From Auanema rhodensis (taxonomy: Eukaryota > Animalia > Nematoda): a stretch of 64,000 nt of DNA. The translations under genes were made by a program, and so were the position numbers. Shown piece after piece: positions 25,001-47,200 of this stretch; positions within the stretch are counted from its first letter, which is position 1, and each line of letters starts with the position of its first letter. The stretch spans positions 1 to 64,000 of the forward strand of contig OZ059894.1 of NCBI GenBank assembly GCA_964057225.1, given 5' to 3'. A model generated the notes under the pieces. The model was given only the letters and a program-made list of their open reading frames with translations, searched no databases and had not been told where the DNA came from.

Positions 25001-28000
25001 GTTCACGTAAATTTCAAAGTCATGGTTACCATGAACCAATATCAATAAAAATTTGTTTTTAGACTAATATGGACATGGGGAATCTAATTTTGGAAACCGC
25101 ATCTCTTTATCTTTCACGTGAAGCGAGTTACATACCAAGTGCACATCACGTGTACATTTAATTAGCATAAATTAAAGTTCACGTAAACTTCAAAGTCATG
25201 GTTACCATGAAGCAATATCAATAAAAATTTGTTTTTAGACTGATATGGACATGGGGAATCTAATTTTGAAAACCGCATCTCTTTATCTTTCACGTGAAGC
25301 GAGTTACATACCAAGTGCACATCACGTGTACATTTAATTAGCATAAATTAAAGTTCACGTAAATTTCAAAGTCATGGTTACCATGAACCAATATCAATAA
25401 AAATTTGTTTTTAGACTAATATGGACATGGGGAATCTAATTTTGAAAACCGCATCTCTTTATCTTTCACGTGAAGCGAGTTACATACCAAGTGCACATCA
25501 CGTGTACATTTAATTAGCATAAATTAAAGTTCACGTAAATTTCAAAGTCATGGTTACCATGAACCAATATCAATAAAAATTTGTTTTTAGACTAATATGG
25601 ACATGGGGAATCTAATTTTGAAAACCGCATCTCTTTATCTTTCACGTGAAGCGAGTTACATACCAAGTGCACATCACGTGTACATTTAATTAGCATAAAT
25701 TAAAGTTCACGTAAATTTCAAAGTCATGGTTACCATGAAGCAATATCAATAAAAATTTGTTTTTAGACTAATATGGACATGGGGAATCTAATTTTGAAAA
25801 CCGCATCTCTTTATCTTCCACGTGAAGCGAGTTACATACCAAGTGCACATCACGTGTACATTTAATTAGCATAAATTAAAGTTCACGTAAATTTCAAAGT
25901 CATGGTTACCATGAACCAATATCAATAAAAATTTGTTTTTAGACTAATATGGACATGGGGAATCTAATTTTGAAAACCGCATCTCTTTATCTTTCACGTG
26001 AAGCGAGTTACATACCAAGTGCACATCACGTGTACATTTAATTAGCATAAATTAAAGTTCACGTAAATTTCAAAGTCATGGTTACCATGAAGCAATATCA
26101 ATAAAAATTTGTTTTTAGACTAATATGGACATGGGGAATCTAATTTTGAAAACCGCATCTCTTTATCTTTCACGTGAAGCGAGTTACATACCAAGTGCAC
26201 ATCACGTGTACATTTAATTAGCATAAATTAAAGTTCACGTAAATTTCAAAGTCATGGTTACCATGCACCAATATCAATAAAAATTTGTTTTTAGACTAAT
26301 ATGGACATGGGGAATCTAATTTTGGAAACCGCATCTCTTTATCTTTCACGTGAAGCGAGTTACATACCAAGTGCACATCACGTGTACATTTAATTAGCAT
26401 AAATTAAAGTTCACGTAAATTTCAAAGTCATGGTTACCATGAACCAATATCAATAAAAATTTGTTTTTAGACTAATGTGGACATGGGGAATCTAATTTTG
26501 AAAACCGCATCTCTTTATCTTTCACGTGAAGCGAGTTACATACCAAGTGCACATCACGTGTACATTTAATTAGCATAAATTAAAGTTCACGTAAATTTCA
26601 AAGTCATGGTTACCATGAACCAATATCAATAAAAATTTGTTTTTAGACTAATATGGACATGGGGAATCTAATTTTGAAAACCGCATCTCTTTATCTTTCA
26701 CGTGAAGCGAGTTACATACCAAGTGCACATCACGTGTACATTTAATTAGCATAAATTAAAGTTCACGTAAACTTCAAAGTCATGGTTACCATGAAGCAAT
26801 ATCAATAAAAATTTGTTTTTAGCCTAATATGGACATGGGGAATCTAATTTTGAAAACCGCATCTCTTTATCTTTCACGTGAAGCGAGTTACATACCAAGT
26901 GCACATCACGTGTACATTTAATTAGCATAAATTAAAGTTCACGTAAATTTCAAAGTCATGGTTACCATGAACCAATATCAATAAAAATTTGTTTTTAGAC
27001 TAATATGGACATGGGGAATCTAATTTTGAAAACCGCATCTTTTTATCTTTCACGTGAAGCGAGTTACATACCAAGTGCACATCACGTGTACATTTAATTA
27101 GCATAAATTAAAGATCACGTAAATTTCAAAGTCATGGTTACCATGAAGCAATATCAATAAAAATTTGTTTTTAGACTAATATGGACATGGGGAATCTAAT
27201 TTTGAAAACCGCATCTCTTTATCTTTCACGTGAAGCGAGTTACATACCAAGTGCACATCACGTGTACATTTAATTAGCATAAATTAAAGTTCACGTAAAT
27301 TTCAAAGTCATGGTTACCATGCACCAATATCAATAAAAATTTGTTTTTAGACTAATATGGACATGGGGAATCTAATTTTGGAAACCGCATCTCTTTATCT
27401 TTCACGTGAAGCGAGTTACATACCAAGTGCACATCACGTGTACATTTAATTAGCATAAATTAAAGTTCACGTAAATTTCAAAGTCATGGTTACCATGAAC
27501 CAATATCAATAAAAATTTGTTTTTAGACTAATGTGGACATGGGGAATCTAATTTTGAAAACCGCATCTCTTTATCTTTCACGTGAAGCGAGTTACATACC
27601 AAGTGCACATCACGTGTACATTTAATTAGCATAAATTAAAGTTCACGTAAATTTCAAAGTCATGGTTACCATGAAGCAATATCAATAAAAATTTGTTTTT
27701 AGACTAATATGGACATGGAGAATCTAATTTTGAAAACCGCATCTCTTTATCTTTCACGTGAAGCGAGTTACATACCAAGTGCACATCACGTGTACATTTA
27801 ATTAGCATAAATTAAAGTTCACGTAAATTTCAAAGTCATGGTTACCATGAAGCAATATCAATAAAAATTTGTTTTTAGACTAATATGGACATGGGGAATC
27901 TAATTTTGAAAACCGCATCTCTTTATCTTTCACGTGAAGCGAGTTACATACCAAGTGCACATCACGTGTACATTTAATTAGCATAAATTAAAGTTCACGT

Positions 28001-29195
28001 AAATTTCAAAGTCATGGTTACCATGAAGCAATATCAATAAAAATTTGTTTTTAGACTAATATGGACATGGGGAATCTAATTTTGAAAACCGCATCTCTTT
28101 ATCTTTCACGTGAAGCGAGTTACATACCAAGTGCACATCACGTGTACATTTAATTAGCATAAATTAAAGTTCACGTAAATTTCAAAGTCATGGTTACCAT
28201 GAACCAATATCAATCAAAATTTGTTTTTAGACTAATATGGACATGGGGAATCTAATTTTGAAAACCGCATCTCTTTTTCTTTCACGTGAAGCGAGTTACA
28301 TACCAAGTGCACATCACGTGTACATTTAATTAGCATGAATTAAAGTTCACGTAAATTTCAAAGTCATGGTTACCATGCACCAATATCAATAAAAATTTGT
28401 TTTTAGACTAATATGGACATGGGGAATCTAATTTTGAAAACCGCATCTCTTTATCTTTCACGTGAAGCGAGTTACATACCAAGTGCACATCACGTGTACA
28501 TTTAATTAGCATAAATTAAAGTTCACGTAAATTTCAAAGTCATGGTTACCATGCACCAATATCAATAAAAATTTGTTTTTAGACTAATATGGACATGGGG
28601 AATCTAATTTTGAAAACCGCATCTCTTTATCTTTCACGTGAAGCGAGTTACATACCAAGTGCACATCACGTGTACATTTAATTAGCATAAATTAAAGTTC
28701 ACGTAAATTTCAAAGTCATGGTTACCATGCACCAATATCAATAAAAATTTGTTTTTAGACTAATATGGACATGGGGAATCTAATTTTGAAAACCGCATCT
28801 CTTTATCTTTCACGTGAAGCGAGTTACATACCAAGTGCACATCACGTGTACATTTAATTAGCATAAATTAAAGTTCACGTAAATTTCAAAGTCATGGTTA
28901 CCATGAACCAATATCAATCAAAATTTGTTTTTAGACTAATATGGACATGGGGAATCTAATTTTGAAAACCGCATCTCTTTTTCTTTCACGTGAAGCGAGT
29001 TACATACCAAGTGCACATCACGTGTACATTTAATTAGCATGAATTAAAGTTCACGTAAATTTCAAAGTCATGGTTACCATGCACCAATATCAATAAAAAT
29101 TTGTTTTTAGACTAATATGGACATGGGGAATCTAATTTTGAAAACCGCATCTCTTTATCTTTCACGTGAAGCGAGTTACATACCAAGTGCACATC

Positions 29196-29233
29196 ACGTG
29201 TACATTTAATTAGCATAAATTAAAGTTCACGTA
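29196..29233 (+). repeat. Left copy of the 37-38 bp target-site duplication of LINE A
   Basis: ACGTGTACATTTAATTAGCATAAATTAAAGTTCACGTA precedes the element and recurs at 33107-33144. The variant order across the insertion matches the empty paralogous site near 38035, favouring duplication over deletion. Confidence 0.8.
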
Positions 29234-29234
29234 T

Positions 29235-29771
29235 GAGGTCACGGCGCGGAATGAGGTCATTGAAACCATTAGGACGAACAAAACCAAATGTTTCGAAAGC
29301 TTGTCTAAGACCTTTATTCGCCGCGACTATCTTCCTTTTGAGGTAGATCTTGAAAAAAAACTTCGCGAAGAAGCAAAAGCCAAAAATTTGGATAATGGTG
29401 AATCATTTCTCATTGTACGCGATCTTAAACTTATAAAGATTCCACGTAAATCAACTGCCCGTCCAACCACTCCTACTCCACATGTTCTTCTTAATACTTC
29501 TACTGTTTTAAATTGCAATCTAAATGTTCAATGTCCGTCCAATGTTGATTCTGGTGTTATATCTAGCCCCCCTTCTAAATCTAGTAGGAATAGTCGCTCA
29601 ACTGGCAGGTCAAAATTTCTTTCTCTGGAGAAGAAATCTTCTATTAGCCCCAGAAGAAGAAAGAATCCACCACGTTCTGTTAAGCCTACTGTTGAACTTC
29701 CTACTAGATCAAAAAGCGGATCCGATACAACATCTCTATCTCGGTCCTGTAACAACATGTCCTTTCGTTAA
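29235..29771 (+). CDS. ORF1 (nucleic-acid-binding protein), C-terminal ~178 aa, 5'-truncated
   Basis: The frame is open from the junction (EVTARNEVIETIRTNKTKCFESLSKTFIRRDYLPFE...SPRRRKNPPRS...MSFR*) and is homologous to element B ORF1. The track's TTG start at 29301 is not a real start. Confidence 0.85.
   Translation, partial: EVTARNEVIETIRTNKTKCFESLSKTFIRRDYLPFEVDLEKKLREEAKAKNLDNGESFLIVRDLKLIKIPRKSTARPTTPTPHVLLNTSTVLNCNLNVQCPSNVDSGVISSPPSKSSRNSRSTGRSKFLSLEKKSSISPRRRKNPPRSVKPTVELPTRSKSGSDTTSLSRSCNNMSFR
29757..29771 (+). promoter_or_regulatory. Putative +1 programmed ribosomal frameshift site (AUG UCC_UUU_CGU_UAA), element A
   Basis: The 15-mer is identical in both elements, ORF2 lies in the +1 frame, and the motif matches the influenza PA-X UCC_UUU_CGU shift site. 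Confidence 0.7.
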
Positions 29772-32607
29772 AACCCCTTCTTCACCATGCTCGCTTTTTC
29801 CTCATGTCCCTGTCGAATTATCAGTCCACTGTTACAATGCACGTTCTATTCTCAATAAGCTTCATTTCCTCACAACCATTCACTCTATTTCATCCCCTGA
29901 TATTATCGCCATATCGGAATCTTGGCTGTTTTCTGATTTTTCTTCTGATCATCTTCCCTTAAATGATCATTACAACATATTCAGAGCAGACAAGCATTCT
30001 TCTCGCGGCGGTGGTACTCTTTTGTTTTTAAAAAAACAAATTAACTCAATCTTACTTTCCTCCTCACCTCTCTACTCCTCTGTTCAATATGTTACAATCC
30101 TTCTCACCTCTATCAACTCGGTTTTCTCCGTTTGTTACCGTTCCCCTTCTGCTTCTCACTCTGATTTCTGTTCCTATCTCTCGGATCTCAGTGGTCATAT
30201 ATCAAATCGCTCTTTTTTTGTTACAGGCGATTTGAACTTTCCTAATATCAATTGGGATCTTCTTCAGTCCTCACTCTCATCTCCTTCTAGTAAATCAATT
30301 ATTCAATTTCTTCAAAGTAGTCATTCTGACCAACTCGTTAATTTTCCTACACGTGGTAACAACATCTTAGACTACATTATCACAAACAATCCTTCAATCA
30401 TATCTAATATATCACGCTCCCCTCCATTGGGTAACTCCGATCACTTCTCGGTTACTTTCTCCATCATCATAAACATTCCTGTATCCCCTACGGATACCTT
30501 TCCTTTCTCTTCCAAAAGCCTCTCCAACAGTTCCTCACTATCTAACTTTTCTCAACTCAATTTCTATCGAGCCGACTTCAATGCTATTAATCGTCATCTT
30601 GTCAGCATCGACTTCTCATTGGTATTATCTGGTCTTTCCCCTCTTGACTCCTACTCCAAATTCATCAACATTCTCCAATCCATAATCTCTGTATTTGTTC
30701 CTCACAAACAACCTAGGCGTAGGAGCAAAGTTGACCGCAATATCGCAGATCTCTACTGTTACATCAAAAAACTTAGTTCATCCATCTGCCACCGTGACGA
30801 GCTCCTCCGCAAAAAACTAACTATAAAACTGGACAGACTTATTAAACAAAAGTCTATTTTGGAAGAAGAACAGATTGCTTCAACCAATAACTCCAAACGT
30901 TTTTATCGCTTCTGTAGAACTCGTCTCGGTGGATGCTCTTCAGATATCCCCACGATCAGATGTGGCGAAGAAGTATACTCCACAGACACAGACAAAGCTT
31001 CCATCTTTGCAGGCTCCTTCTCTGTTAAACCAAGTACTTCATCTGATTTAATCAACACCTCTTCTTGCCCTTCTTCTATCATTGATTTTATAGACATTTC
31101 TCCCGAAAAAGTCTATAAAGTTCTTTCTCATCTTCCTCTTAGAGTCTCTACTTCTTCTGACGGCATTCCCTACTACTTTCTCAATCAGTGCGCCTCTACT
31201 CTTTGCTACCCACTTGCCTTTATCTTTCACAATCTACTTGTTTCTTCTTCATGCCCTCCGGACTGGAAGAGAGCTTGGATCCGTCCTGTTTTCAAATCCG
31301 GAAATCGCTCTAATCCTTCAAATTATCGCCCTATCTCATTAACACCAAGTCTTTCTAAAGTTTTTGAACGACTCATCTCACCTCCACTTCTCCACTTTGG
31401 CATTTCAACTGGATCTATATCTGCCCACCAACACGCTTTTCGTCCTAAACGTAATACCATATCAGCAATCATTAACAATCATATTGCTTGGAGATCATGT
31501 TTAGATAAAAACATACCAGTCTATACTGCTTTCATAGACTTCTCTAAAGCTTTTGATCTAATTGATCACTCGGTTCTTTTTCACAAATTTAAAACTATTG
31601 GTATCTGCGGTTCTCTTCAAACCTTCCTTAAAAACTTCATCACTGGTAGATCTTACTCAGTTCTTGTCAATGGTTCTTTCTCCACTTCTGTTAACTTATC
31701 TTGTGGTGTTCCACAAGGCACTGTTTTGGGCCCTCTCCTATTCCTTTTCTACATTAATGACATTACGTCTTCTCTCCCTGAAGATGTTCATCCTACACTT
31801 TTTGCCGATGATCTCAAGTTATACAGTACTAATCCGGTAAGTCTACAGATTGCCTTAAACACAATCAACGCTTGGTGTAAAAATAATGGAATGATGGTCA
31901 ACACCACCAAATCCAAAATTATGATAGTTTGCAATAATAGCTCAACCCTCAATACCATTGAGCCATTTACCTTTGGTGAGTTTCCTTTGAACTTTGTGCT
32001 CCATTATAAAGATCTTGGTGTTCTAACTGATTACAATCTTACATTTGATAGTCACATAAACGCCATCAGTTGCGCCGCTGCCCTTAAATGTCGCATCCTT
32101 CTACGCTGCTTTCACTCTAGGTCACCTCCATTTATGTTTAACCTTTTTTGCAGCTACGTCCGACCAATCCTTGAATATGCATCCGTGATATGGTCTCCTC
32201 AAGTATCCAAAAAAATATCTCGTATTGAGATGGTTCAGAAAAAATTCCTACGAGCAGTCTTCTCAAGAGCAGGAATTTTTTCAGACTACAAAAGTCAGCT
32301 CACTTTTTTGAATGCTCAAGAACTATCAACCAGAAGACAGGTAACTGATCTAGGTTTTTATTTTTCTCAAATTAAAGACGTATCAACTGACAGTATTTTA
32401 AGAATTTTTCAAGCTAAACATTTCACACACTCTCTTCGCAGACACCAATGGAATATCGACTATCCTGATCTTCGGAAAGTTGCAACAAGGAATGGTATCG
32501 AGTACAGAGGCATCAAAACTTGGAACGATTTACCTGAAAACCTTGTCAACCTTACTAATGTTCATAATTTCAAGAAACATTTACTCTCTGCTCCAATAGA
32601 TTTGTAA
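29764..32607 (+). CDS. ORF2: APE endonuclease + reverse transcriptase, intact (~947 aa from the proposed shift site; frame open from 29524)
   Basis: APE motifs CYNARS, IAISESW, RGGG, YRSP, GDLN, PTR..ILD, SDH. RT motifs YRPISL, IDFSKAFD, GVPQGTVLGPLLF, FADD, YKDLGV. CR1/L2-like C-terminus (RPILEYAS.IWSP, WNDLPE). No RNase H or CCHC knuckle seen. Confidence 0.95.
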   Translation, partial: FVKTPSSPCSLFPHVPVELSVHCYNARSILNKLHFLTTIHSISSPDIIAISESWLFSDFSSDHLPLNDHYNIFRADKHSSRGGGTLLFLKKQINSILLSSSPLYSSVQYVTILLTSINSVFSVCYRSPSASHSDFCSYLSDLSGHISNRSFFVTGDLNFPNINWDLLQSSLSSPSSKSIIQFLQSSHSDQLVNFPTRGNNILDYIITNNPSIISNISRSPPLGNSDHFSVTFSIIINIPVSPTDTFPFSSKSLSNSSSLSNFSQLNFYRADFNAINRHLVSIDFSLVLSGLSPLDSYSKFINILQSIISVFVPHKQPRRRSKVDRNIADLYCYIKKLSSSICHRDELLRKKLTIKLDRLIKQKSILEEEQIASTNNSKRFYRFCRTRLGGCSSDIPTIRCGEEVYSTDTDKASIFAGSFSVKPSTSSDLINTSSCPSSIIDFIDISPEKVYKVLSHLPLRVSTSSDGIPYYFLNQCASTLCYPLAFIFHNLLVSSSCPPDWKRAWIRPVFKSGNRSNPSNYRPISLTPSLSKVFERLISPPLLHFGISTGSISAHQHAFRPKRNTISAIINNHIAWRSCLDKNIPVYTAFIDFSKAFDLIDHSVLFHKFKTIGICGSLQTFLKNFITGRSYSVLVNGSFSTSVNLSCGVPQGTVLGPLLFLFYINDITSSLPEDVHPTLFADDLKLYSTNPVSLQIALNTINAWCKNNGMMVNTTKSKIMIVCNNSSTLNTIEPFTFGEFPLNFVLHYKDLGVLTDYNLTFDSHINAISCAAALKCRILLRCFHSRSPPFMFNLFCSYVRPILEYASVIWSPQVSKKISRIEMVQKKFLRAVFSRAGIFSDYKSQLTFLNAQELSTRRQVTDLGFYFSQIKDVSTDSILRIFQAKHFTHSLRRHQWNIDYPDLRKVATRNGIEYRGIKTWNDLPENLVNLTNVHNFKKHLLSAPIDL

Positions 32608-32781
32608 ACCAAATACTGTAGATAATGTTCTCACCCCTCAAAAATCTTTTTTGTTTTCTATTTTATCAGGCTTTTTTTTATTTGTAGTTCGTTCTTTTTC
32701 ACACTTGTTTATGACCACATGGCAACAGTCCACCATTTATTTTTCTTTGTCCCTTCTGAACTCTTGTTACTTCGTCACTAT

Positions 32782-32911
32782 TCCTATAGACATTAGTCAT
32801 ACGGATCGGGCGCTAGTTACCTCCAAATTGCTAGAACGGGCTTGCCTCAGATCACGAGTACCACCGTACCTAACAACCACACTAGTGAGGTCAGCCATCG
32901 TGCTGAACAAA
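32782..32911 (+). ncRNA. Conserved structured cis-RNA element (hairpin + pseudoknotted domain + hairpin) in the 3' UTR of element A
   Basis: Aligns with 42710-42838 with compensatory base changes in three helices, while flanking UTR sequence is poorly conserved. Confidence 0.75.
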
Positions 32912-33069
32912 CCCCATGCATACAACAAGAATTTTACTTGGCGGACTGTTCACTATTGATCTTAAATAAGCGAGCTCTTATCGAACTGGCAATATTAAAA
33001 ATCCTTTTTCATGTTCTTATTGAATGGTTTTTAATTTTTTTCACTCAATTACTTAACAGCTATTTGTCT

Positions 33070-33108
33070 TAACCTGTGATATTGAACAATAAACATTAAA
33101 CATTAAAC
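33070..33108 (+). terminator. Conserved 3'-terminal motif TAACCTGTGAT..GAACAATAAAC with AATAAA and a (CATTAAA)2 tail
   Basis: AATAAA at 33088-33093. The motif is shared with the end of element B. Short tandem-repeat tails are typical of CR1/L2 LINEs. Confidence 0.75.
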
Positions 33109-36100
33109 GTGTACATTTAATTAGCATAAATTAAAGTTCACGTAAATTTCAAAGTCATGGTTACCATGCACCAATATCAATAAAAATTTGTTTTTAGACT
33201 AATATGGACATGGGGAATCTAATTTTGAAAACCGCATCTCTTTATCTTTCACGTGAAGCGAGTTACATACCAAGTGCACATCACGTGTACATTTAATTAG
33301 CATAAATTAAAGTTCACGTAAATTTCAAAGTCATGGTTACCATGCACCAATATCAATAAAAAGTTGTTTTTAGACTAATATGGACATGGGGAATCTAATT
33401 TTGAAAACCGCATCTCTTTATCTTTCACGTGAAGCGAGTTACATACCAAGTGCACATCACGTGTACATTTAATTAGCATAAATTAAAGTTCACGTAAATT
33501 TCAAAGTCATGGTTACCATGCACCAATATCAATAAAAATTTGTTTTTAGAATAATATGGACATGGGGAATCTAATTTTGAAAACCGCATCTCTTTATCTT
33601 TCACGTGAAGCGAGTTACATACCAAGTGCACATCACGTGTACATTTAATTAGCATAAATTAAAGTTCACGTAAATTTCAAAGTCATGGTTACCATAAACC
33701 AATATCAATAAAAATTTGTTTTTAGACTAATATGGACATGGGGAATCTAATTTTGAAAACCGCATCTCTTTATCTTTCACGTGAAGCGAGTTACATACCA
33801 AGTGCACATCACGTGTACATTTAATTAGCATAAATTAAAGTTCACGTAAATTTCAAAGTCATGGTTACCATGCACCAATATCAATAAAAATTTGTTTTTA
33901 GACTAATATGGACATGGGGAATCTAATTTTGAAAACCGCATCTCTTTATCTTTCACGTGAAGCGAGTTACATACCAAGTGCACATCACGTGTACATTTAA
34001 TTAGCATAAATTAAAGTTCACGTAAATTTCAAAGTCATGGTTACCATGAACCAATATCAATCAAAATTTGTTTTTAGACTAATATGGACATGGGGAATCT
34101 AATTTTGAAAACCGCATCTCTTTTTCTTTCACGTGAAGCGAGTTACATACCAAGTGCACATCACGTGTACATTTAATTAGCATGAATTAAAGTTCACGTA
34201 AATTTCAAAGTCATGGTTACCATGCACCAATATCAATAAAAATTTGTTTTTAGACTAATATGGACATGGGGAATCTAATTTTGAAAACCGCATCTCTTTA
34301 TCTTTCACGTGAAGCGAGTTACATACCAAGTGCACATCACGTGTACATTTAATTAGCATAAATTAAAGTTCACGTAAATTTCAAAGTCATGGTTACCATG
34401 CACCAATATCAATAAAAATTTGTTTTTAGACTAATATGGACATGGGGAATCTAATTTTGAAAACCGCATCTCTTTATCTTTCACGTGAAGCGAGTTACAT
34501 ACCAAGTGCACATCACGTGTACATTTAATTAGCATAAATTAAAGTTCACGTAAATTTCAAAGTCATGGTTACCATGAAGCAATATCAATAAAAATTTGTT
34601 TTTAGACTAATATGGACATGGGGAATCTAATTTTGAAAACCGCATCTCTTTATCTTTCACGTGAAGCGAGTTACATACCAAGTGCACATCACGTGTACAT
34701 TTAATTAGCATAAATTAAAGTTCACGTAAATTTCAAAGTCATGGTTACCATGAAGCAATATCAATAAAAATTTGTTTTTAGACTAATATGGACATGGGGA
34801 ATCTAATTTTGAAAACCGCATCTCTTTATCTTTCACGTGAAGCGAGTTACATACCAAGTGCACATCACGTGTACATTTAATTAGCATAAATTAAAGTTCA
34901 CGTAAATTTCAAAGTCATGGTTACCATGAACCAATATCAATCAAAATTTGTTTTTAGACTAATATGGACATGGGGAATCTAATTTTGAAAACCGCATCTC
35001 TTTTTCTTTCACGTGAAGCGAGTTACATACCAAGTGCACATCACGTGTACATTTAATTAGCATGAATTAAAGTTCACGTAAATTTCAAAGTCATGGTTAC
35101 CATGCACCAATATCAATAAAAATTTGTTTTTAGACTAATATGGACATGGGGAATCTAATTTTGAAAACCGCATCTCTTTATCTTTCACGTGAAGCGAGTT
35201 ACATACCAAGTGCACATCACGTGTACATTTAATTAGCATAAATTAAAGTTCACGTAAATTTCAAAGTCATGGTTACCATGCACCAATATTAATAAAAATT
35301 TGTTTTTAGACTAATATGGACATGGGGAATCTAATTTTGAAAACCGCATCTCTTTATCTTTCACGTGAAGCGAGTTACATACCAAGTGCACATCACGTGT
35401 ACATTTAATTAGCATAAATTAAAGTTCACGTAAATTTCAAAGTCATGGTTACCATGCACCAATATCAATAAAAATTTGTTTTTAGACTAATATGGACATG
35501 GGGAATCTAATTTTGAAAACCGCATCTCTTTATCTTTCACGTGAAGCGAGTTACATACCAAGTGCACATCACGTGTACATTTAATTAGCATAAATTAAAG
35601 TTCACGTAAATTTCAAAGTCATGGTTACCATGAACCAATATCAATCAAAATTTGTTTTTAGACTAATATGGACATGGGGAATCTAATTTTGAAAACCGCA
35701 TCTCTTTTTCTTTCACGTGAAGCGAGTTACATACCAAGTGCACATCACGTGTACATTTAATTAGCATGAATTAAAGTTCACGTAAATTTCAAAGTCATGG
35801 TTACCATGCACCAATATCAATAAAAATTTGTTTTTAGACTAATATGGACATGGGGAATCTAATTTTGAAAACCGCATCTCTTTATCTTTCACGTGAAGCG
35901 AGTTACATACCAAGTGCACATCACGTGTACATTTAATTAGCATAAATTAAAGTTCACGTAAATTTCAAAGTCATGGTTACCATGCACCAATATCAATAAA
36001 AATTTGTTTTTAGACTAATATGGACATGGGGAATCTAATTTTGAAAACCGCATCTCTTTATCTTTCACGTGAAGCGAGTTACATACCAAGTGCACATCAC

Positions 36101-38918
36101 GTGTACATTTAATTAGCATAAATTAAAGTTCACGTAAATTTCAAAGTCATGGTTACCATGAACCAATATCAATCAAAATTTGTTTTTAGACTAATATGGA
36201 CATGGGGAATCTAATTTTGAAAACCGCATCTCTTTTTCTTTCACGTGAAGCGAGTTACATACCAAGTGCACATCACGTGTACATTTAATTAGCATGAATT
36301 AAAGTTCACGTAAATTTCAAAGTCATGGTTACCATGCACCAATATCAATAAAAATTTGTTTTTAGACTAATATGGACATGGGGAATCTAATTTTGAAAAC
36401 CGCATCTCTTTATCTTTCACGTGAAGCGAGTTACATACCAAGTGCACATCACGTGTACATTTAATTAGCATAAATTAAAGTTCACGTAAATTTCAAAGTC
36501 ATGGTTACCATGCACCAATATTAATAAAAATTTGTTTTTAGACTAATATGGACATGGGGAATCTAATTTTGAAAACCGCATCTCTTTATCTTTCACGTGA
36601 AGCGAGTTACATACCAAGTGCACATCACGTGTACATTTAATTAGCATAAATTAAAGTTCACGTAAATTTCAAAGTCATGGTTACCATGCACCAATATCAA
36701 TAAAAATTTGTTTTTAGACTAATATGGACATGGGGAATCTAATTTTGAAAACCGCATCTCTTTATCTTTCACGTGAAGCGAGTTACATACCAAGTGCACA
36801 TCACGTGTACATTTAATTAGCATAAATTAAAGTTCACGTAAATTTCAAAGTCATGGTTACCATGAACCAATATCAATCAAAATTTGTTTTTAGACTAATA
36901 TGGACATGGGGAATCTAATTTTGAAAACCGCATCTCTTTTTCTTTCACGTGAAGCGAGTTACATACCAAGTGCACATCACGTGTACATTTAATTAGCATG
37001 AATTAAAGTTCACGTAAATTTCAAAGTCATGGTTACCATGCACCAATATCAATAAAAATTTGTTTTTAGACTAATATGGACATGGGGAATCTAATTTTGA
37101 AAACCGCATCTCTTTATCTTTCACGTGAAGCGAGTTACATACCAAGTGCACATCACGTGTACATTTAATTAGCATAAATTAAAGTTCACGTAAATTTCAA
37201 AGTCATGGTTACCATGCACCAATATCAATAAAAATTTGTTTTTAGACTAATATGGACATGGGGAATCTAATTTTGAAAACCGCATCTCTTTATCTTTCAC
37301 GTGAAGCGAGTTACATACCAAGTGCACATCACGTGTACATTTAATTAGCATAAATTAAAGTTCACGTAAATTTCAAAGTCATGGTTACCATGAAGCAATA
37401 TCAATAAAAATTTGTTTTTAGACTAATATGGACATGGGGAATCTAATTTTGAAAACCGCATCTCTTTATCTTTCACGTGAAGCGAGTTACATACCAAGTG
37501 CACATCACGTGTACATTTAATTAGCATAAATTAAAGTTCACGTAAATTTCAAAGTCATGGTTACCATGAAGCAATATCAATAAAAATTTGTTTTTAGACT
37601 AATATGGACATGGGGAATCTAATTTTGAAAACCGCATCTCTTTATCTTTCACGTGAAGCGAGTTACATACCAAGTGCACATCACGTGTACATTTAATTAG
37701 CATAAATTAAAGTTCACGTAAATTTCAAAGTCATGGTTACCATGAACCAATATCAATCAAAATTTGTTTTTAGACTAATATGGACATGGGGAATCTAATT
37801 TTGAAAACCGCATCTCTTTTTCTTTCACGTGAAGCGAGTTACATACCAAGTGCACATCACGTGTACATTTAATTAGCATGAATTAAAGTTCACGTAAATT
37901 TCAAAGTCATGGTTACCATGCACCAATATCAATAAAAATTTGTTCTTAGACTAATATGGACATGGGGAATCTAATTTTGAAAACCGCATCTCTTTATCTT
38001 TCACGTGAAGCGAGTTACATACCAAGTGCACATCACGTGTACATTTAATTAGCATAAATTAAAGTTCACGTAAATTTCAAAGTCATGGTTACCATGCACC
38101 AATATCAATAAAAATTTGTTTTTAGACTAATATGGACATGGGGAATCTAATTTTGAAAACCGCATCTCTTTATCTTTCACGTGAAGCGAGTTACATACCA
38201 AGTGCACATCACGTGTACATTTAATTAGCATAAATTAAAGTTCACGTAAATTTCAAAGTCATGGTTACCATGCACCAATATCAATAAAAAGTTGTTTTTA
38301 GACTAATATGGACATGGGGAATCTAATTTTGAAAACCGCATCTCTTTATCTTTCACGTGAAGCGAGTTACATACCAAGTGCACATCACGTGTACATTTAA
38401 TTAGCATAAATTAAAGTTCACGTAAATTTCAAAGTCATGGTTACCATGCACCAATATCAATAAAAATTTGTTTTTAGAATAATATGGACATGGGGAATCT
38501 AATTTTGAAAACCGCATCTCTTTATCTTTCACGTGAAGCGAGTTACATACCAAGTGCACATCACGTGTACATTTAATTAGCATAAATTAAAGTTCACGTA
38601 AATTTCAAAGTCATGGTTACCATAAACCAATATCAATAAAAATTTGTTTTTAGACTAATATGGACATGGGGAATCTAATTTTGAAAACCGCATCTCTTTA
38701 TCTTTCACGTGAAGCGAGTTACATACCAAGTGCACATCACGTGTACATTTAATTAGCATAAATTAAAGTTCACGTAAATTTCAAAGTCATGGTTACCATG
38801 AAGCAATATCAATAAAAATTTGTTTTTAGACTAATATGGACATGGGGAATCTAATTTTGAAAACCGCATCTCTTTATCTTTCACGTGAAGCGAGTTACAT
38901 ACCAAGTGCATATCACGT
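33107..38918 (+). repeat. 176-bp satellite, middle block (exactly 33 monomers + 4 bp)
   Basis: 5812 bp = 33x176+4, confirming both LINE 3' junctions are in the same monomer phase. Rich in 3-5-mer subrepeats carrying AATCAAAA, CTCTTTTTCT and GCATGAAT variants. Confidence 0.99.
38915..38918 (+). repeat. Left copy of the 4-bp target-site duplication (ACGT) of LINE B; right copy at 43073-43076
   Basis: ...GTGCATATCACGT|AACACC... at the 5' side and ...GTTCAA|ACGTGTAC... at the 3' side. Confidence 0.75.
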
Positions 38919-39758
38919 AACACCACCCATAACTCACCTCTTCTTTCTTCTTCCAATGTTGCATGCCAAATCCAAAAAATTAGATCAGAGGAGACAAAGT
39001 ACGATTATCGTTGTAAGAGAGCCCTCTGGTTCCGTGTACCAGTCTCTTGCCCGGATTTACCTTCTGACCCTTCTTCTTTACTGAAACTGGTCATTGAGAA
39101 ATCCAACGACACTACTTTGTCAACTCTCCTTAACACTAACCAAATAACCATTACACGTTGCATCCTTAAATCTAAATCCCCAGGCCCACTCATTATTACT
39201 TGTCCATCGGTTGAATTGCGGGATAAGATCATAACATCTATCAAAGCAAATAAGACTAAATGTTTCGAATCTTTATCTAAAACTTTTGTACGTCGCGACT
39301 ATCTTCCTTTTGAAATTCAACTGGAAAACAACCTTCGCGAGGAAGCAAAAGAAAAAAACAAAAACAACACTAAGTCTGTCTTTTTGGTACGAGATCTTCG
39401 ACTTATTGAAGTTTCCCGCAATCCAGCCGATCCTCCAAACCCTCAAGTAGCTCCCACTTCTTCTTGTAATCAAACTCCTAAAATACCATCTATTCCAAAC
39501 GTTCCATTACCAACACTCCATTCTCAAACTCTCACATCCCCAACTCTTTTTTCTAGCCCCCCTTGTAAATCTGGTAGAATGAGCCGGTCGAAGGAAAGAC
39601 AGAACCGCACGTCAAAAGACAAGCGTTCTTCTGTTAGCCCAAGACGTCGCAAAAATCCACCACGATCTGCAAAATTAACCACAGATCAAATTACCAGATC
39701 TGTTAGCATGAACAATACATCTCAACGTCTCACGTCTGACAAAATGTCCTTTCGTTAA
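38919..39758 (+). CDS. ORF1, C-terminal 279 aa, 5'-truncated; RRM/CTD-like region plus Ser/Pro/Arg-rich basic tail
   Basis: Manual translation is open from the junction (NTTHNSPLL...RCKRALWFRVP...PGPLIITCPSVELRDKII...TFVRRDYLPFE...MSFR*). The spacing resembles the L1/CR1 ORF1 RRM-CTD signatures (PRPIIVKF, IFI..DL). Confidence 0.85.
   Translation, partial: NTTHNSPLLSSSNVACQIQKIRSEETKYDYRCKRALWFRVPVSCPDLPSDPSSLLKLVIEKSNDTTLSTLLNTNQITITRCILKSKSPGPLIITCPSVELRDKIITSIKANKTKCFESLSKTFVRRDYLPFEIQLENNLREEAKEKNKNNTKSVFLVRDLRLIEVSRNPADPPNPQVAPTSSCNQTPKIPSIPNVPLPTLHSQTLTSPTLFSSPPCKSGRMSRSKERQNRTSKDKRSSVSPRRRKNPPRSAKLTTDQITRSVSMNNTSQRLTSDKMSFR
39744..39758 (+). promoter_or_regulatory. Putative +1 programmed ribosomal frameshift site (AUG UCC_UUU_CGU_UAA), element B
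   Basis: The ORF2 frame is closed upstream by TGA at 39709-39711 and has no ATG until after the endonuclease domain (~40519). The motif is identical to element A. Confidence 0.72.
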
Positions 39759-42578
39759 CACTGTCACGTCTTCAACCCCCCCTGTCTCACATCCTACCAG
39801 CCTCTCAGTTCAGTGTTTTAATGCACGTTCTATTCTTAACAAACTTCATATACTATCCCACGTTATTTCTTTATCCACTCCTGATATAATTGCAATATCA
39901 GAATCATGGCTTTTTCCTGAGTTCGATACCCACCTACTCCCATGTAAAGATACTTACACTATTTTTAGAGCCGATAGGTGTCTCTCACGTGGTGGTGGTG
40001 TTGTCCTCTATATTAAAAGTCATATCAAACCTTTTCTTCTTTCCTGTTCTTCTCCTCAATCTTCTATACAATTCATTAACTTACTCATACCTTCACTTAA
40101 TGCTGTTTTCTCACTCTGTTATCGTCCTCCAACAGCTTCTCATTCAGATTTCATTTCGTTTCTTTCTGATCTACGTAAACAAATTTCCAAACGATCGTTC
40201 TTCCTAACGGGCGATCTAAATTTTCCTAAAATCAACTGGGACCTCGGTATTTGCTCTCAACCATGCTCCTCTAGTAGATCTATTCTTCAATTTCTCAACG
40301 ATAGCTGTTCTCATCAGTTGGTAAAGTTCCCTACCAGAGGCAAGAGCATTCTTGATTATGTTATCACTGATAACATATCCAGTGTAGGCAACATATCCCG
40401 TTCTTCCCCCCTCGGCTCCTCGGATCACCATTCTGTGGTTTTCCAAATTGTTTCAGACTCTTTTCAGTTAGCTAATACAATCAGCTCTTCTAATACTTTG
40501 TCTCCGGTAGCATTACCTATGTTTTCTGATCGCAATTTTCAAGCTGCTGACTACAATCTCATCAATCATAGAATAGCCAAAATTGATTTCGCTAATCATC
40601 TCTCCGGTCTCACTCCTTTAGATTCTTACTCTGAACTTGTTCACATTCTTCACTCGGTCATTGATAGCTGCGTTCCCAAAAAACAAGAAAGAAGAAAAAA
40701 GAAGATTGACCGAGATATTTTAAAACTCTCATCTCATATAAAAAAACTCAGTTGTTCTTATCATCATCATGATGAATCCCGTCGTAAAAAACTTTCACAT
40801 TCTCTTGATAAACTTATCAAGAATAGATTGGCTTCGGAAGAGGAACGTATTGCCAACTATAATAATTCAAAACTTCTTTACCGCTTTTGCAGAACCCGTT
40901 TGGGTGGCAGCACTTCAGATATCCCAAATCTCAAAATAGATAATGATTCTGTTTCGTCTGATTCTGACAAAGCTTCTATCTTTGCTACTACCTTCTCTGT
41001 TCGCCCCCTTCCTATCTTTCTACCACATGCTCCTCATTCCTCTTCTTCTACTATTATCGACTTTATTGATGTCTCCCCTCTCAACGTTCACAAAATTCTC
41101 TGTCAGTTACCTCTTCGGGTATCAACATCCCCAGACGGAATCCCTTATTTCTTCCTAAAAAATTGTGCTTCTACTCTCTCTCAGCCTCTGGCCTTTGTTT
41201 TCCACAATCTACTTGTTTCCTCCTCTTGTCCTCCTGACTGGAAAACAGCTTGTATTCGTCCCGTTCATAAATCAGGACTTTCTTCTAACCCGGCTAATTA
41301 TCGTCCTATTTCTCTCACATCCAGTCTGTCTAAAGTTTTTGAACGTCTTTTGCGTTCACCTCTTCTTGACTTTGGTATTTCCTCCGGCTTTATTTCTCCT
41401 AATCAGTTTGCTTTTCTTCCAAAACGCAATACTGTATCGGCAATTCTTAGTAGTCATGTTCTCTGGAGATCTGCTGTAGACAAGAAAAAACCTGTTTATG
41501 TTGCCTTTATTGACTTTTCTAAGGCTTTTGATCTCATAAACCATTCCGTTCTGTTAGCTAAATTAAAATCAATTGGCATTGACGGCTGTATTCTCACTTT
41601 TCTCAAAAACTTCATTACTAATAGATCTTTCTCTGTATTAGTTAATTACTCTCTATCCGTCACAAATTCTTTGCCCTGTGGAGTTCCTCAGGGGACAGTA
41701 CTGGGTCCTCTTCTTTTTTTATTTTATATAAATGATATTACATCAAATTTACCTGATGATGTACATCCAACTCTTTATGCAGACGATCTTAAACTAAGCA
41801 GCACAAATCCGGTAAGTTTACAACTAGCTTTGAATATTCTAAAAACTGGTGTCTATCTAACGGTATGAAAGTTAATACTTCCAAATCCAAAGTTATGATT
41901 ATATCGAGTACCACTACACCAAGAACAAACACAATTTTCAAATTTGGAGACATTTCTTTAGCTACAGTATCATCATATAAAGATCTAGGTGTGTGTACAG
42001 ACTATAATCTCTCTTTTAACAGTCATATAGACAGAATTTCTAACATTGCTGCTCACAAATGTCGTGTTATTTTGCGTTGTTTTTACTCAAGATCACCAAC
42101 TTTGATGTTCAAACTTTTTTGCTGCTATATCCGACCGATTTTAGAATATGCTTCAGTTGTATGGTCTCCTCAGAATAACAAAGATAAAGCGCGCATTGAG
42201 TCTGTCCAAAAAAAGTTTTTAAACGCTATTTTTAAGAGAGCCGAAATAGCTTTGGATTACAAGAACCAGCTATTGTTTCTTGGAGCCGAGGAGCTAACGT
42301 TTAGAAGACTACTAATTGATCTCGTTTTTTATCATAATCAGATTACTAAAAATGTTCCAGAAAACAACCTTAACTTTTTTACTACCAAGCACTATGCTCA
42401 TTCACTACGTAGACATCTATGGAATGTTGAATACCCTGATCTTTGGAAGAGCGAAACAAGAACTGGAATAGAATACAGAGCTATTCAAATCTGGAACACA
42501 CTCCCTGAAAACATCGTTCAACTAAGAAACACTTCCAGCTTCAGAAAACATCTTTCTATTAATCTTAACAATATTTAA
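39751..42578 (+). pseudogene. ORF2 (APE endonuclease + RT) of element B, broken by one 1-nt deletion at 41841-41845 (real lesion or homopolymer error)
   Basis: The frame is open 39712-41868 (CFNARSILNKL, IAISESW, RGGG, GDLN, SDH, YRPISL, YADD) and continues in the 41865-42578 frame. Adding one A restores LNILKNWCLSNGMKVN, colinear with element A LNTINAWCKNNGMMVN. Confidence 0.9.
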
Positions 42579-42709
42579 CCTTTCTCTGTTATTGTAACTT
42601 GAAATCTTGTTTATGTATATTCCTCTATTTACAAGCATTTAAGCCTCAAGCTATGTTAAAGTTAGACAGTTCCCTAGTTTACCTCTGAGACCTGTTACTA
42701 CGCATTTTA

Positions 42710-42838
42710 TCCTATAGACATTAGTCATACGGATAGAACGATAGTTACCTCTTGCTGTCAGAACGGGCTTGACTCACATCAAGAGTTCCACCGTACCTGT
42801 CAGAATACTATAGAGGTCAGTGATCTACACTGAACAAA
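42710..42838 (+). ncRNA. Conserved structured cis-RNA element in the 3' UTR of element B
   Basis: Homologous to 32782-32911. The first 24 nt are identical (TCCTATAGACATTAGTCATACGGA) and the stems covary. Confidence 0.75.
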
Positions 42839-43040
42839 TCAACTCTTCTTTATCAAACTAGAACTGATTCGAAACCTTAACAAACAAGTAGTGCTGCTCA
42901 CTATCATTGTAAAAGAAAATATGCTGAACCTGTCTCTTGTACATATATTTTTTTAGTCAATTATTACAAGTATGTTTGTATTGTAAGGTTCTTTTGAATA
43001 TCTGCAATTTTCCCGATTTATTAACTTTGTTTTCCGATTA

Positions 43041-43074
43041 TAACCTGTGATTCGAACAATAAACCCGTTCAAAC
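43041..43074 (+). terminator. Conserved 3'-terminal motif with AATAAA, element B
   Basis: TAACCTGTGATTCGAACAATAAAC, with AATAAA at 43058-43063. Confidence 0.72.
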
Positions 43075-44249
43075 GTGTACATTTAATTAGCATGAATTAA
43101 AGTTCACGTAAATTTCAAAGTCATGGTTACCATGCACCAATATCAATAAAAATTTGTTTTTAGACTAATATGGACATGGGGAATCTAATTTTGAAAACCG
43201 CATCTCTTTATCTTTCACGTGAAGCGAGTTACATACCAAGTGCACATCACGTGTACATTTAATTAGCATAAATTAAAGTTCACGTAAATTTCAAAGTCAT
43301 GGTTACCATGCACCAATATCAATAAAAATTTGTTTTTAGACTAATATGGACATGGGGAATCTAATTTTGAAAACCGCATCTCTTTATCTTTCACGTGAAG
43401 CGAGTTACATACCAAGTGCACATCACGTGTACATTTAATTAGCATAAATCAAAGTTCACGTAAATTTCAAAGTCATGGTTACCATGCACCAATATCAATA
43501 AAAAGTTGTTTTTAGACTAATATGGACATGGGGAATCTAATTTTGAAAACCGCATCTCTTTATCTTTCACGTGAAGCGAGTTACATACCAAGTGCACATC
43601 ACGTGTACATTTAATTAGCATAAATTAAAGTTCACGTAAATTTCAAAGTCATGGTTACCATGTACCAATATCAATACAAATTTGTTTTTAGACTAATATG
43701 GACATGGGGAATCTAATTTTGAAAACCGCATCTCTTTATCTTTCACGTGAAGCGAGTTACATACCAAGTGCACATCACGTGTACATTTAATTAGCATAAA
43801 TTAAAGTTCACGTAAATTTCAAAGTCATGGTTACCATGCACCAATATCAATAAAAATTTGTTTTTAGACTAATATGGACATGGGGAATCTAATTTTGAAA
43901 ACCGCATCTCTTTATCTTTCACGTGAAGCGAGTTACATACCAAGTGCACATCACGTGTACATTTAATTAGCATAAATTAAAGTTCACGTAAATTTCAAAG
44001 TCATGGTTACCATGCACCAATATCAATAAAAATTTGTTTTTAGACTAATATGGACATGGGGAATCTAATTTTGAAAACCGCATCTCTTTATCTTTCACGT
44101 GAAGCGAGTTACATACCAAGTGCACATCACGTGTACATTTAATTAGCATAAATTAAAGTTCACGTAAATTTCAAAGTCATGGTTACCATGAAGCAATATC
44201 AATAAAAATTCGTTTTTAGACTAATATGGACATGGGGAATCTAATTTTG

Positions 44250-47200
44250 AAAACCGCATCTCTTTATCTTTCACGTGAAGCGAGTTACATACCAAGTGCA
44301 CATCACGTGTACATTTAATTAGCATAAATTAAAGTTCACGTAAATTTCAAAGTCATGGTTACCATGAAGCAATATCAATAAAAATTTGTTTTTAGACTAA
44401 TATGGACATGGGGAATCTAATTTTGTTTTTTTTTGTTTTAATTTTGCAAACCGCATCTCTTTATCTTTCACGTGAAGCGAGTTACATACCAAGTGCACAT
44501 CACGTGTACATTTAATTAGCATAAATTAAAGTTCACGTAAATTTCAAAGTCATGGTTACCATGAACCAATATCAATCAAAATTTGTTTTTAGACTAATAT
44601 GGACATGGGGAATCTAATTTTGAAAACCGCATCTCTTTATCTTTCACGTGAAGCGAGTTACATACCAAGTGCACATCACGTGTACATTTAATTAGCATAA
44701 ATTAAAGTTCACGTAAATTTCAAAGTCATGGTTACCATGAAGCAATATCAATAAAAATTTGTTTTTAGACTAATATGGACATGGGGAATCTAATTTTGAA
44801 AACTGCATCTCTTTATCTTTCACGTGAAGCGAGTTACATACCAAGTGCACATCACGTGTACATTTAATTAGCATAAATTAAAGTTCACGTAAATTTCAAA
44901 GTCATGGTTACCATGAACCAATATCAATAAAAATTTGTTTTTAGACTAATATGGACATGGGGAATCTAATTTTGAAAACCGCATCTCTTTATCTTTCACG
45001 TGAAGCGAGTTACATACCAAGTGCACATCACGTGTACATTTAATTAGCATGAATTAAAGTTCACGTAAATTTCAAAGTCATGGTTACCATGCACCAATAT
45101 CAATAAAAATTTGTTTTTAGACTAATATGGACATGGGGAATCTAATTTTGAAAACCGCATCTCTTTATCTTTCACGTGAAGCGAGTTACATACCAAGTGC
45201 ACATCACGTGTACATTTAATTAGCATAAATTAAAGTTCACGTAAATTTCAAAGTCATGGTTACCATGCACCAATATCAATAAAAATTTGTTTTTAGACTA
45301 ATATGGACATGGGGAATCTAATTTTGAAAACCGCATCTCTTTATCTTTCACGTGAAGCGAGTTACATACCAAGTGCACATCACGTGTACATTTAATTAGC
45401 ATAAATTAAAGTTCACGTAAATTTCAAAGTCATGGTTACCATGAAGCAATATCAATAAAAATTCGTTTTTAGACTAATATGGACATGGGGAATCTAATTT
45501 TGAAAACCGCATCTCTTTATCTTTCACGTGAAGCGAGTTACATACCAAGTGCACATCACGTGTACATTTAATTAGCATAAATTAAAGTTCACGTAAATTT
45601 CAAAGTCATGGTTACCATGAACCAATATCAATCAAAATTTGTTTTTAGACTAATATGGACATGGGGAATCTAATTTTGAAAACCGCATCTCTTTATCTTT
45701 CACGTGAAGCGAGTTACATACCAAGTGCACATCACGTGTACATTTAATTAGCATAAATTAAAGTTCACGTAAATTTCAAAGTCATGGTTACCATGAAGCA
45801 ATATCAATAAAAATTTGTTTTTAGACTAATATGGACATGGGGAATCTAATTTTGAAAACCGCATCTCTTTATCTTTCACGTGAAGCGAGTTACATACCAA
45901 GTGCACATCACGTGTACATTTAATTAGCATGAATTAAAGTTCACGTAAATTTCAAAGTCATGGTTACCATGCACCAATATCAATAAAAATTTGTTTTTAG
46001 ACTAATATGGACATGGGGAATCTAATTTTGAAAACCGCATCTCTTTATCTTTCACGTGAAGCGAGTTACATACCAAGTGCACATCACGTGTACATTTAAT
46101 TAGCATAAATTAAAGTTCACGTAAATTTCAAAGTCATGGTTACCATGCACCAATATCAATAAAAATTTGTTTTTAGACTAATATGGACATGGGGAATCTA
46201 ATTTTGAAAACCGCATCTCTTTATCTTCCACGTGAAGCGAGTTACATACCAAGTGCACATCACGTGTACATTTAATTAGCATAAATTAAAGTTCACGTAA
46301 ATATCAAAGTCATGGTTACCATGCACCAATATCAATAAAAAGTTGTTTTTAGACTAATATGGACATGGGGAATCTAATTTTGAAAACCGCAGCTCTTTAT
46401 CTTTCACGTGAAGCGAGTTACATACCAAGTGCACATCACGTGTACATTTAATTAGCATAAATTAAAGTTCACGTAAATTTCAAAGTCATGGTTACCATGA
46501 AGCAATATCAATAAAAATTTGTTTTTAGACTAATATGGACATGGGGAATCTAATTTTGAAAACCGCATCTCTTTATCTTTCGCGTGAAGCGAGTTACATA
46601 CCAAGTGCACATCACGTGTACATTTAATTAGCATAAATTAAAGTTCACGTAAATTTCAAAGTCATGGTTACCATAAACCAATATCAATAAAAATTTGTTT
46701 TTAGACTAATATGGACATGGGGAATCTAATTTTGAAAACCGCATCTCTTTATCTTTCACGTGAAGCGAGTTACATACCAAGTGCACATCACGTGTACATT
46801 TAATTAGCATAAATTAAAGTTCACGTAAATTTCAAAGTCATGGTTACCATGAAGCAATATCAATAAAAATTTGTTTTTAGACTAATATGGACATGGGGAA
46901 TCTAATTTTGAAAACCGCATCTCTTTATCTTTCACGTGAAGCGAGTTACATACCAAGTGCACATCACGTGTACATTTAATTAGCATAAATTAAAGTTCAC
47001 GTAAATTTCAAAGTCATGGTTACCATGAACCAATATCAATAAAAATTTGTTTTTAGACTAATATGGACATGGGGAATCTAATTTTGAAAACCGCATCTCT
47101 TTATCTTTCACGTGAAGCGAGTTACATACCAAGTGCACATCACGTGTACATTTAATTAGCATAAATTAAAGTTCACGTAAATTTCAAAGTCATGGTTACC

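What the first reader, a model, noticed from the sequence alone, without database searches (positions are those of the whole stretch)
29196..43076. Two diverged LINE subfamilies inserted at the identical nucleotide and orientation of the satellite monomer: a satellite-targeted LINE
Seen: both 3' junctions read ...AA|ACGTGTACATTTAATT (33107 and 43073), i.e. insertion at GCACATC^ACGTGTAC, both on the + strand. The block between them is exactly 33x176+4 bp. The elements differ throughout and have different 5' truncations and TSDs, so they are independent events. A random second hit would match site and strand about 1 time in 352. Established: the 3' junction marks the TPRT first-strand nick. Sequence-specific APE LINEs exist (R1, Tx1, SART/TRAS), whereas CR1-group elements are generally considered non-specific. 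Inference: a CR1-like lineage specialised for this satellite (possibly centromeric) has kept its target through substantial divergence.
Basis: partly seen in the sequence, partly recalled or inferred. Interest (0 to 1): 0.85.

Follow-up and report, generated by a model that had tools for sequence, protein, structure and literature searches.

The report
Two LINEs sharing one satellite site
Two young, distantly related retrotransposon copies sit at the same base of a 176-bp satellite repeat, and all their junctions fall on the short palindrome ACGT; this suggests a sequence preference not described for their group (CR1-like), but two copies cannot show that the satellite itself is the target.

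Summary
Two 5'-truncated CR1-type LINEs (29233-33106, 38919-43072; + strand; 64% identical, synonymous sites saturated) join a homogeneous 176-bp satellite at the same base. They are independent, recent insertions: element 1's empty site exists intact nearby (1 mismatch in 1056 bp). The RT neighbours are nematode elements; no close relative and no match to the satellite was found.

The 1/352 figure overstates the case. Both tails end in AAAC, giving a 2-nt microhomology (22 such sites per monomer). Both 5' junctions also end on ACGT, which occurs three times per monomer. Element 2's 4-bp duplication is the CR1 default. Element 1's 37-bp duplication runs from one ACGT to the next, which fits a second ACGT cut or satellite read-through from a donor copy.

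My estimates: sequence-directed insertion about 0.77, a satellite-dedicated lineage about 0.5. A bare ACGT preference would give the same site 1 time in 5-6. Centromeric status is untested. Side finding: both ORF1s end in the +1 frameshift motif UCC_UUU_CGU, leading into ORF2, which in element 2 has no in-frame AUG.

The parts
1..64000 (.). 176-bp satellite array (32% GC). It fills the whole window apart from the two elements. 309 regular monomers, mean 1.28 differences from consensus; three ACGT per monomer (positions 1, 34, 145).
29196..29232 (+). Element 1, 5' copy of the 37-bp duplication. It runs from ACGT site 1 to the end of ACGT site 2; the next base (A, 29233) is ambiguous.
29233..33106 (+). 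Element 1: 5'-truncated LINE (ORF1 3' part, uninterrupted ORF2, 3' UTR, tail)
29235..29771 (+). Element 1 ORF1, C-terminal part (RRDY...LREEA...VRDL motif shared with relatives)
29760..29771 (+). TCC TTT CGT TAA: candidate +1 frameshift site joining ORF1 to ORF2
   Evidence: PMC3498833
29764..32607 (+). Element 1 ORF2 frame: APE endonuclease (about 29821-30474, catalytic residues intact) and RT (about 31315-31926); no C-terminal CCHC motif seen
32755..32911 (+). Conserved 3' UTR block (128/165 identical to element 2; 25-nt invariant run at 32782-32806); no Rfam match
33088..33108 (+). Element 1 tail AATAAAC(ATTAAAC)2; the last AC is shared with the target
33107..33143 (+). Element 1, 3' copy of the 37-bp duplication (the first 33 nt may be read-through from a donor)
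   Evidence: inference
33107..38918 (.). Intervening satellite, 33x176+4 bp. It holds at 37683-38738 an uninterrupted copy of element 1's empty site.
38915..38918 (+). Element 2, 5' copy of the target duplication ACGT; private C>T change just upstream at 38911
38919..43072 (+). Element 2: 5'-truncated LINE
38919..39758 (+). Element 2 ORF1 part, ending TCC TTT CGT TAA (39747-39758)
39751..42578 (+). Element 2 ORF2 (APE + RT). No in-frame ATG before the endonuclease; one frame break at or near the A5 run 41841-41845.
42684..42838 (+). Conserved 3' UTR block of element 2 (folds at z = -3.1)
43058..43074 (+). Element 2 tail AATAAAC CCGTTC AAAC; the last AC is shared with the target
43073..43076 (+). 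Element 2, 3' copy of the target duplication ACGT

Best explanation
A CR1-type LINE lineage, probably from a nematode, lives in this satellite and inserts by target-primed reverse transcription at the palindrome ACGT. The endonuclease makes a 4-nt staggered cut just 3' of ACGT on each strand (inferred). The RNA tail ending in AAAC pairs with the freed 3' end through AC (the microhomology is shown, its use is inferred). Copies already sitting at site 1 are transcribed into the downstream satellite; that extra RNA pairs with a nicked monomer and keeps the 3' junction in the same phase and orientation (inferred). Element 2 is then a plain site-1 insertion with a 4-bp duplication. Element 1 is either a site-2 insertion carrying 33 nt of donor satellite, or a site-1 insertion whose second cut slipped to the next ACGT. 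Most copies of both subfamilies should lie in this array with the same 3' junction.
For: Same 3' junction and strand in two independent insertions. Clean insertion: element 1's empty site matches 37683 with 1 mismatch in 1056 bp (next best 7); element 2's matches 49628 with 1 in 528 bp. Both 5' junctions end on TCACGT; simulated chance is 0.065-0.098 each. CR1/L2 duplications peak at 3-5 bp (PMC4245944), so 37 bp needs an explanation and it ends exactly on the next ACGT. Better tail matches in the monomer (AAAC, 2 sites; AAC, 6 sites) were not used. R1Bm needs downstream target sequence in its RNA and shows 3' transduction (PMC7265360). Saturated synonymous sites with pN 0.24-0.26 show long separate lives as active elements. 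The array holds two young copies and no other transposon.
Against: Only two insertions. The ACGT motif was noticed after the fact. Element 2's 5' junction is not independent evidence, as 4 bp is the clade default. No donor copy was seen, and the 33 nt carry no variant that would reveal read-through. No target-specific CR1-group family turned up in the literature searched. The four nearest relatives with a readable 3' flank (L004, L008, L009, L010) are not followed by ACGT. A satellite usually turns over faster than two subfamilies reach synonymous saturation (own knowledge).
Confidence: 0.38

Rival explanations
1. Short-motif preference only. The endonuclease favours (C)ACGT anywhere in the genome, and the satellite is hit because it is rich in the motif. 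The same site twice is a 1-in-5 or 1-in-6 coincidence.
For: All junctions are explained by ACGT. The motif is 4-7 times denser in the satellite than in the elements' own DNA. A short endonuclease hairpin fits short recognition. It needs no long co-evolution with the satellite.
Against: It still needs the 1-in-5 coincidence. It does not by itself explain a 37-bp duplication. Relatives show no ACGT flank.
Confidence: 0.27
2. The endonuclease itself recognises an extended satellite site, as R1 and Tx1 enzymes do, and has kept it through the divergence of the two subfamilies.
For: Identical junction and strand. Endonucleases are 61% identical to each other with intact catalytic residues. Site 1 lies among short palindromes.
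Against: The hairpin that differs among L1, R1 and Tx1 enzymes is shorter here and no different from that of generic relatives. Reported target-specific APE elements are mostly in the R1 and Tx1 clades (PMC4640811). The site-2 junction shares only TCACGT with site 1.
Confidence: 0.12
3. Chance. Two non-specific insertions coincide, helped by the AC microhomology requirement, and the window was flagged because they did.
For: The null is as high as 1/22 with the AC requirement. Many windows are scanned. CR1-group elements are not reported as target-specific.
Against: It also needs element 1's long duplication to end on ACGT (under 0.1), so the joint chance is of order 1e-3 or less.
Confidence: 0.1
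4. Chromatin phasing. Nucleosomes positioned on the 176-bp monomer leave one short linker open, and a non-specific endonuclease, perhaps tethered to this chromatin like Jockey-3, cuts there.
For: The monomer is of nucleosome-repeat length. Both junction sites lie within 37 bp. Jockey-3 is centromere-biased, probably without DNA sequence preference (PMC11575011).
Against: It gives a window of tens of bases and both strands, not one base. No chromatin data are available.
Confidence: 0.08
5. One founding insertion was copied along the array by unequal exchange, and one copy was later overwritten by cDNA of another subfamily through the conserved 3' end.
For: The last 35 nt of the two elements are about 83% identical. 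Local block duplications are common in the array.
Against: The 5' junctions differ and each reconstructs to a clean empty site. The flanking variant patterns of the two elements differ.
Confidence: 0.05

Closest known systems
CR1-group (T1/CR1-type) LINEs of nematodes: RTs of Ancylostoma ceylanicum EYB97875.1, Caenorhabditis brenneri EGT44568.1, C. remanei EFO87533.1, C. japonica, Meloidogyne enterolobii
   Same: APE + RT ORF2 with the same C-terminal form; ORF1 RRDY...VRDL motif; AATAAAC plus short-repeat tail (Ancylostoma copy); 4-bp duplication.
   Different: At most 36% identity over ORF2 and 46% in the RT core. Relatives lack the ACGT flank. Most use an in-frame stop between the ORFs rather than the +1 motif.
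Target-specific APE LINEs of the R1 clade (R1Bm, SART1, TRAS1) and Tx1 clade (Keno)
   Same: Fixed 3' junction in a multicopy repeat, variable 5' junction; RNA-target pairing is a known aid to priming. This is what the element may work like.
   Different: Not a member: no C-terminal CCHC motif, no poly(A), short endonuclease hairpin. The listed targets are RNA genes, transposons, telomeric repeats and microsatellites, not a complex AT-rich satellite.
YURE elements of Ciona (Utopia/NeSL-related)
   Same: Occasionally inserted in a satellite, U2_sat (PMC4640811).
   Different: Related to Utopia/NeSL, which use a restriction-like endonuclease; the satellite derives from U2 snRNA; specificity is weak.
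Drosophila G2/Jockey-3
   Same: APE LINE enriched among centromeric repeats.
   Different: Its bias is attributed to CENP-A chromatin rather than sequence (PMC11575011); no fixed nucleotide.

Membership tests
CR1 group of LINEs | ORF2 with N-terminal APE endonuclease and RT | tested here: met
   Pfam PF03372/PF14529 + PF00078 in both elements; model pLDDT 96, closest fold L1 endonuclease
CR1 group of LINEs | No C-terminal CCHC zinc knuckle or RNase H in ORF2 (feature from own knowledge) | tested here: met
   Translations end in a WNxLP...FxKxL motif; no further Pfam domain
CR1 group of LINEs | 3' end of short repeats rather than poly(A) | tested here: met
   Element 1 has (ATTAAAC)2; element 2 has no poly(A) but only one imperfect unit
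CR1 group of LINEs | Target duplication peak of 3-5 bp (PMC4245944) | tested here: inconclusive
   4 bp in element 2, 37 bp in element 1
CR1 group of LINEs | RT phylogeny within CR1 against curated clade references (CR1, L2, Crack, Daphne, Rex1) | tested here: inconclusive
   Quick tree: the two elements are sisters (100), in a clade with an Ancylostoma RT (SH-aLRT 92) and a wider nematode-containing group (86). No curated references were available, so the exact clade is not fixed.
R1 or Tx1 target-specific APE clades | C-terminal CCHC motif in ORF2 (own knowledge) | tested here: not met
R1 or Tx1 target-specific APE clades | Endonuclease targeting hairpin of R1/Tx1 type | tested here: not met
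   PTRG-NILD here, 7-11 residues shorter than the L1, LR1 and LTx loops and the same as in generic relatives
Target-specific non-LTR element (functional class) | Most genomic copies share one 3' flank in a multicopy target | not testable with these tools
   2 of 2 in the window; no other copy and no satellite match in any collection
Target-specific non-LTR element (functional class) | Endonuclease cleaves the target site selectively in vitro | not testable with these tools
   needs a nicking assay
Centromeric satellite | CENP-A occupancy | not testable with these tools
   only length, AT content and homogeneity are seen

The most novel reading that the evidence does not exclude
A CR1-group LINE lineage is dedicated to one nucleotide of a complex satellite in two long-diverged subfamilies. 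It combines an ACGT-cutting endonuclease with read-through satellite RNA as a guide, and makes its ORF2 as a +1 frameshift fusion with ORF1. This would be a third origin of target specificity among APE LINEs, aimed at satellite DNA.
Probability: 0.4. Interest if true: 0.78.

Novelty: new variant of a known kind. Interest (0 to 1): 0.58.

Why it matters
Target-specific APE LINEs are reported mostly from the R1 and Tx1 clades, and their targets are RNA genes, transposons, telomeric repeats and microsatellites (PMC4640811). A CR1-type element fixed on a satellite would add an independent origin of specificity. It would also give a direct test of how retroelements come to occupy satellite arrays: by sequence, by RNA guidance or by chromatin. 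Two subfamilies with saturated synonymous sites sharing one site would imply either an unusually old satellite motif or a target passed on through donor read-through. Even the weaker result, an ACGT-preferring CR1 endonuclease, was not found in the papers searched.

Tried and rejected
Searches for the same lineage or species all failed. Protein searches gave at most 33-42% identity; ORF1 gave no hit; exact look-up gave none. The 3' UTR 25-mer was absent from metagenome contigs. The satellite 18-20-mer was absent from metagenome, viral and genome contigs. Rfam gave only chance-level hits for the region and for the UTR block. The 176-bp satellite of Bradysia is a different sequence. Literature searches found no nematode 176-bp satellite and no target-specific CR1 element.

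Rejected: simple duplication of one insertion followed by drift, since flanks are 99% homogeneous while the elements are under purifying selection at synonymous saturation. Rejected: the 197/198-bp monomers as aborted insertions; they carry a T-rich insert at position 113, away from any ACGT. Rejected: a peptide in the UTR block, since the two copies differ by a net 1-nt indel. Apparent invariance of the ACGT motifs in the array is not significant. The joint second-strand probability of 0.004-0.01 was downgraded, because 4 bp is the CR1 default. The careful tree did not finish; the quick tree was used. The Anzai 2005 paper was not held. Element 2's ORF2 was searched and compared in two separate pieces and never joined. 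Nothing examined appeared human.

Full report
Observation. The window is one 176-bp satellite array, 32% GC, interrupted twice. The 309 regular monomers differ from consensus at 1.28 positions on average. Element 1 spans 29233-33106 and element 2 spans 38919-43072, both on the + strand. Both are followed by ACGTGTACATTTAATT, at 33107 and 43073, and the block between them is 33x176+4 bp.

What the elements are. Each holds the 3' part of an ORF1, an ORF2 with APE endonuclease and reverse transcriptase, a 3' UTR of about 500 nt and a short tail without poly(A). Element 1's ORF2 is uninterrupted. Element 2's has one frame break at or near an A5 run (41841-41845), which may be a sequencing slip; I handled its two pieces separately. 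Catalytic endonuclease residues are intact in both, and the predicted fold is the L1-type endonuclease. The elements are 64% identical in DNA and 59-64% in ORF2 protein, with pS 0.77-0.83 (saturated) and pN 0.24-0.26. They therefore diverged long ago as active elements.

Relatives. No close relative is on record: at most 36% identity over ORF2. In a quick RT tree of 77 rows (the top-scoring 70 covering the RT core, plus named ones; SH-aLRT only), the two are sisters at 100. They fall in a clade with an Ancylostoma ceylanicum RT (92; named) and in a wider group with Caenorhabditis and Meloidogyne RTs (86). The ORF1 motif and tail style match these relatives. A nematode host and CR1-type assignment are likely but inferred, because no curated clade references were available. 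The satellite has no match in any collection.

Independence and age. Removing element 1 and one copy of its 37-bp duplication gives a 1056-bp stretch that matches 37683-38738 with one mismatch; the next best match has seven. Removing element 2 gives a 528-bp stretch matching 49628 with one mismatch, apparently the private C>T at 38911 next to the junction. Both are clean, recent and separate insertions.

How unlikely is the shared site? 1/352 is the uniform null. Both tails end in AAAC, so the junction has a 2-nt AC microhomology and cannot be placed to the base; the monomer has 22 AC sites on both strands. Longer tail matches (AAC, AAAC) exist and were not used. More telling, both 5' junctions end on TCACGT: element 2 at site 1, element 1 at site 2, 33 bp downstream. 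Read as cuts, all four read CACGT followed by a purine. Simulation gives 0.065-0.098 per junction. But CR1 and L2 duplications peak at 3-5 bp (PMC4245944), so element 2's 4 bp is the default and only element 1's junction is independent evidence. ACGT occurs three times per monomer (six strand-sites, five for CACGT). Once such a motif is granted, the same site recurs 1 time in 5-6, and the satellite is 4-7 times richer in the motif than the elements' own DNA. The data favour a sequence-directed process but do not separate motif preference from satellite targeting.

Mechanism. Shown: shared 3' junction, AC microhomology, ACGT at both 5' junctions, intact enzyme motifs. Inferred: a 4-nt staggered cut 3' of ACGT on both strands, and priming through AC. 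The atypical 37-bp duplication has two readings. Either the second cut fell on the next ACGT, or the real insertion was at site 2 with a normal 4-bp duplication and the first 33 nt came from a donor at site 1 whose transcript ran into satellite. The AATAAA lies only 9-13 nt before the junction, so such read-through is plausible. R1Bm needs downstream target sequence in its RNA and shows 3' transduction (PMC7265360). Read-through would make the site self-perpetuating without extended recognition by the enzyme, which suits an endonuclease whose hairpin is short and generic. The 33 nt carry no diagnostic variant, so the readings cannot be told apart here.

Weights (judgement, not computed): satellite-resident ACGT cutter with RNA guidance 0.38; motif only 0.27; extended-site enzyme 0.12; chance 0.10; nucleosome phasing 0.08; copy-and-overwrite 0.05. 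Satellite-dedicated in either form is about 0.5, and sequence-directed in any form about 0.77. Against a deep-rooted preference, four relatives with readable 3' flanks are not followed by ACGT.

Comparison with known systems. Reported target-specific non-LTR families belong mostly to early-branching clades, Tx1 and R1. The nearest satellite case found, YURE in U2_sat, is related to Utopia/NeSL (PMC4640811). Jockey-3 is centromere-biased, probably through chromatin (PMC11575011). These elements may work like R1 or SART but fail the R1/Tx1 membership features tested. I found no report of a target-specific CR1-group element; the library is incomplete, so this is not proof of absence. Centromeric status is untested.

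Side findings. Both ORF1s end in the identical 15-mer ATG TCC TTT CGT TAA despite saturated synonymous sites. ORF2 lies in the +1 frame, and in element 2 it has no in-frame ATG before the endonuclease. UCC_UUU_CGU is a proven +1 frameshift site (PMC3498833). Six relatives have the two ORFs in one frame split by a single stop; one has CCC_TTT_CAA into the +1 frame; one has G_GGA_AAC into the -1 frame. ORF2 in this group is thus probably made as a recoded fusion with ORF1 (inference). A 157-nt block in the 3' UTR is 78% conserved, with a 25-nt invariant run. It folds significantly in element 2 only and has no Rfam match; it may be the RNA handle for ORF2p.

Verdict. The feature is real and probably not chance. 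A satellite-targeted CR1 lineage is an even bet on two copies, and mapping the other genomic copies would settle it. Interest 0.58; new variant of a known kind.

Noticed in passing
window 29757-29771 and 39744-39758: Identical ATG TCC TTT CGT TAA at the end of ORF1 in both elements. It matches the +1 frameshift motif of influenza PA-X and ASXL, and leads into ORF2, which in element 2 has no in-frame AUG.
   Followed up: partly
L001:975-980, L004:416-421, L005:668-673, L006 (upstream of 558), L011:824-829, L012:1680-1685; L002 near 4920; L007 near 660: Relatives join ORF1 and ORF2 by one in-frame stop (mostly TAG G; TGA CAA in L001), a +1 motif (L002) or a -1 slippery heptamer (L007). This suggests recoded ORF1-ORF2 fusion across the group.
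   Followed up: partly
window 32755-32911 and 42684-42838: Conserved non-coding 3' UTR block, about 200 nt before the 3' end, with shared predicted stem-loops and 4 compensatory pairs in a two-sequence fold; no Rfam family.
   Followed up: partly
window 44305-44501 and 48198-48395: Two monomers carry a 21-22-bp T-rich insert at position 113 with a TAATTTTG duplication; they mark a local duplication of about 3.9 kb.
   Followed up: no
window 152-63900: The array has local higher-order blocks (for example 12-mer, 23-mer and 22-mer duplications) and a shift in dominant variants near 28000 (65G-rich before, 63C-rich after), close to where the elements sit.
   Followed up: no
window 38911: Private C>T change 4 nt upstream of element 2's 5' junction, seen in no regular monomer; possibly a repair error at insertion.
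   Followed up: partly
L004 and L009, 3' flanks: Two sister elements from one metagenome sample end in (ATT)n, and both have TCTCGA a few bases downstream; may be chance.
   Followed up: no
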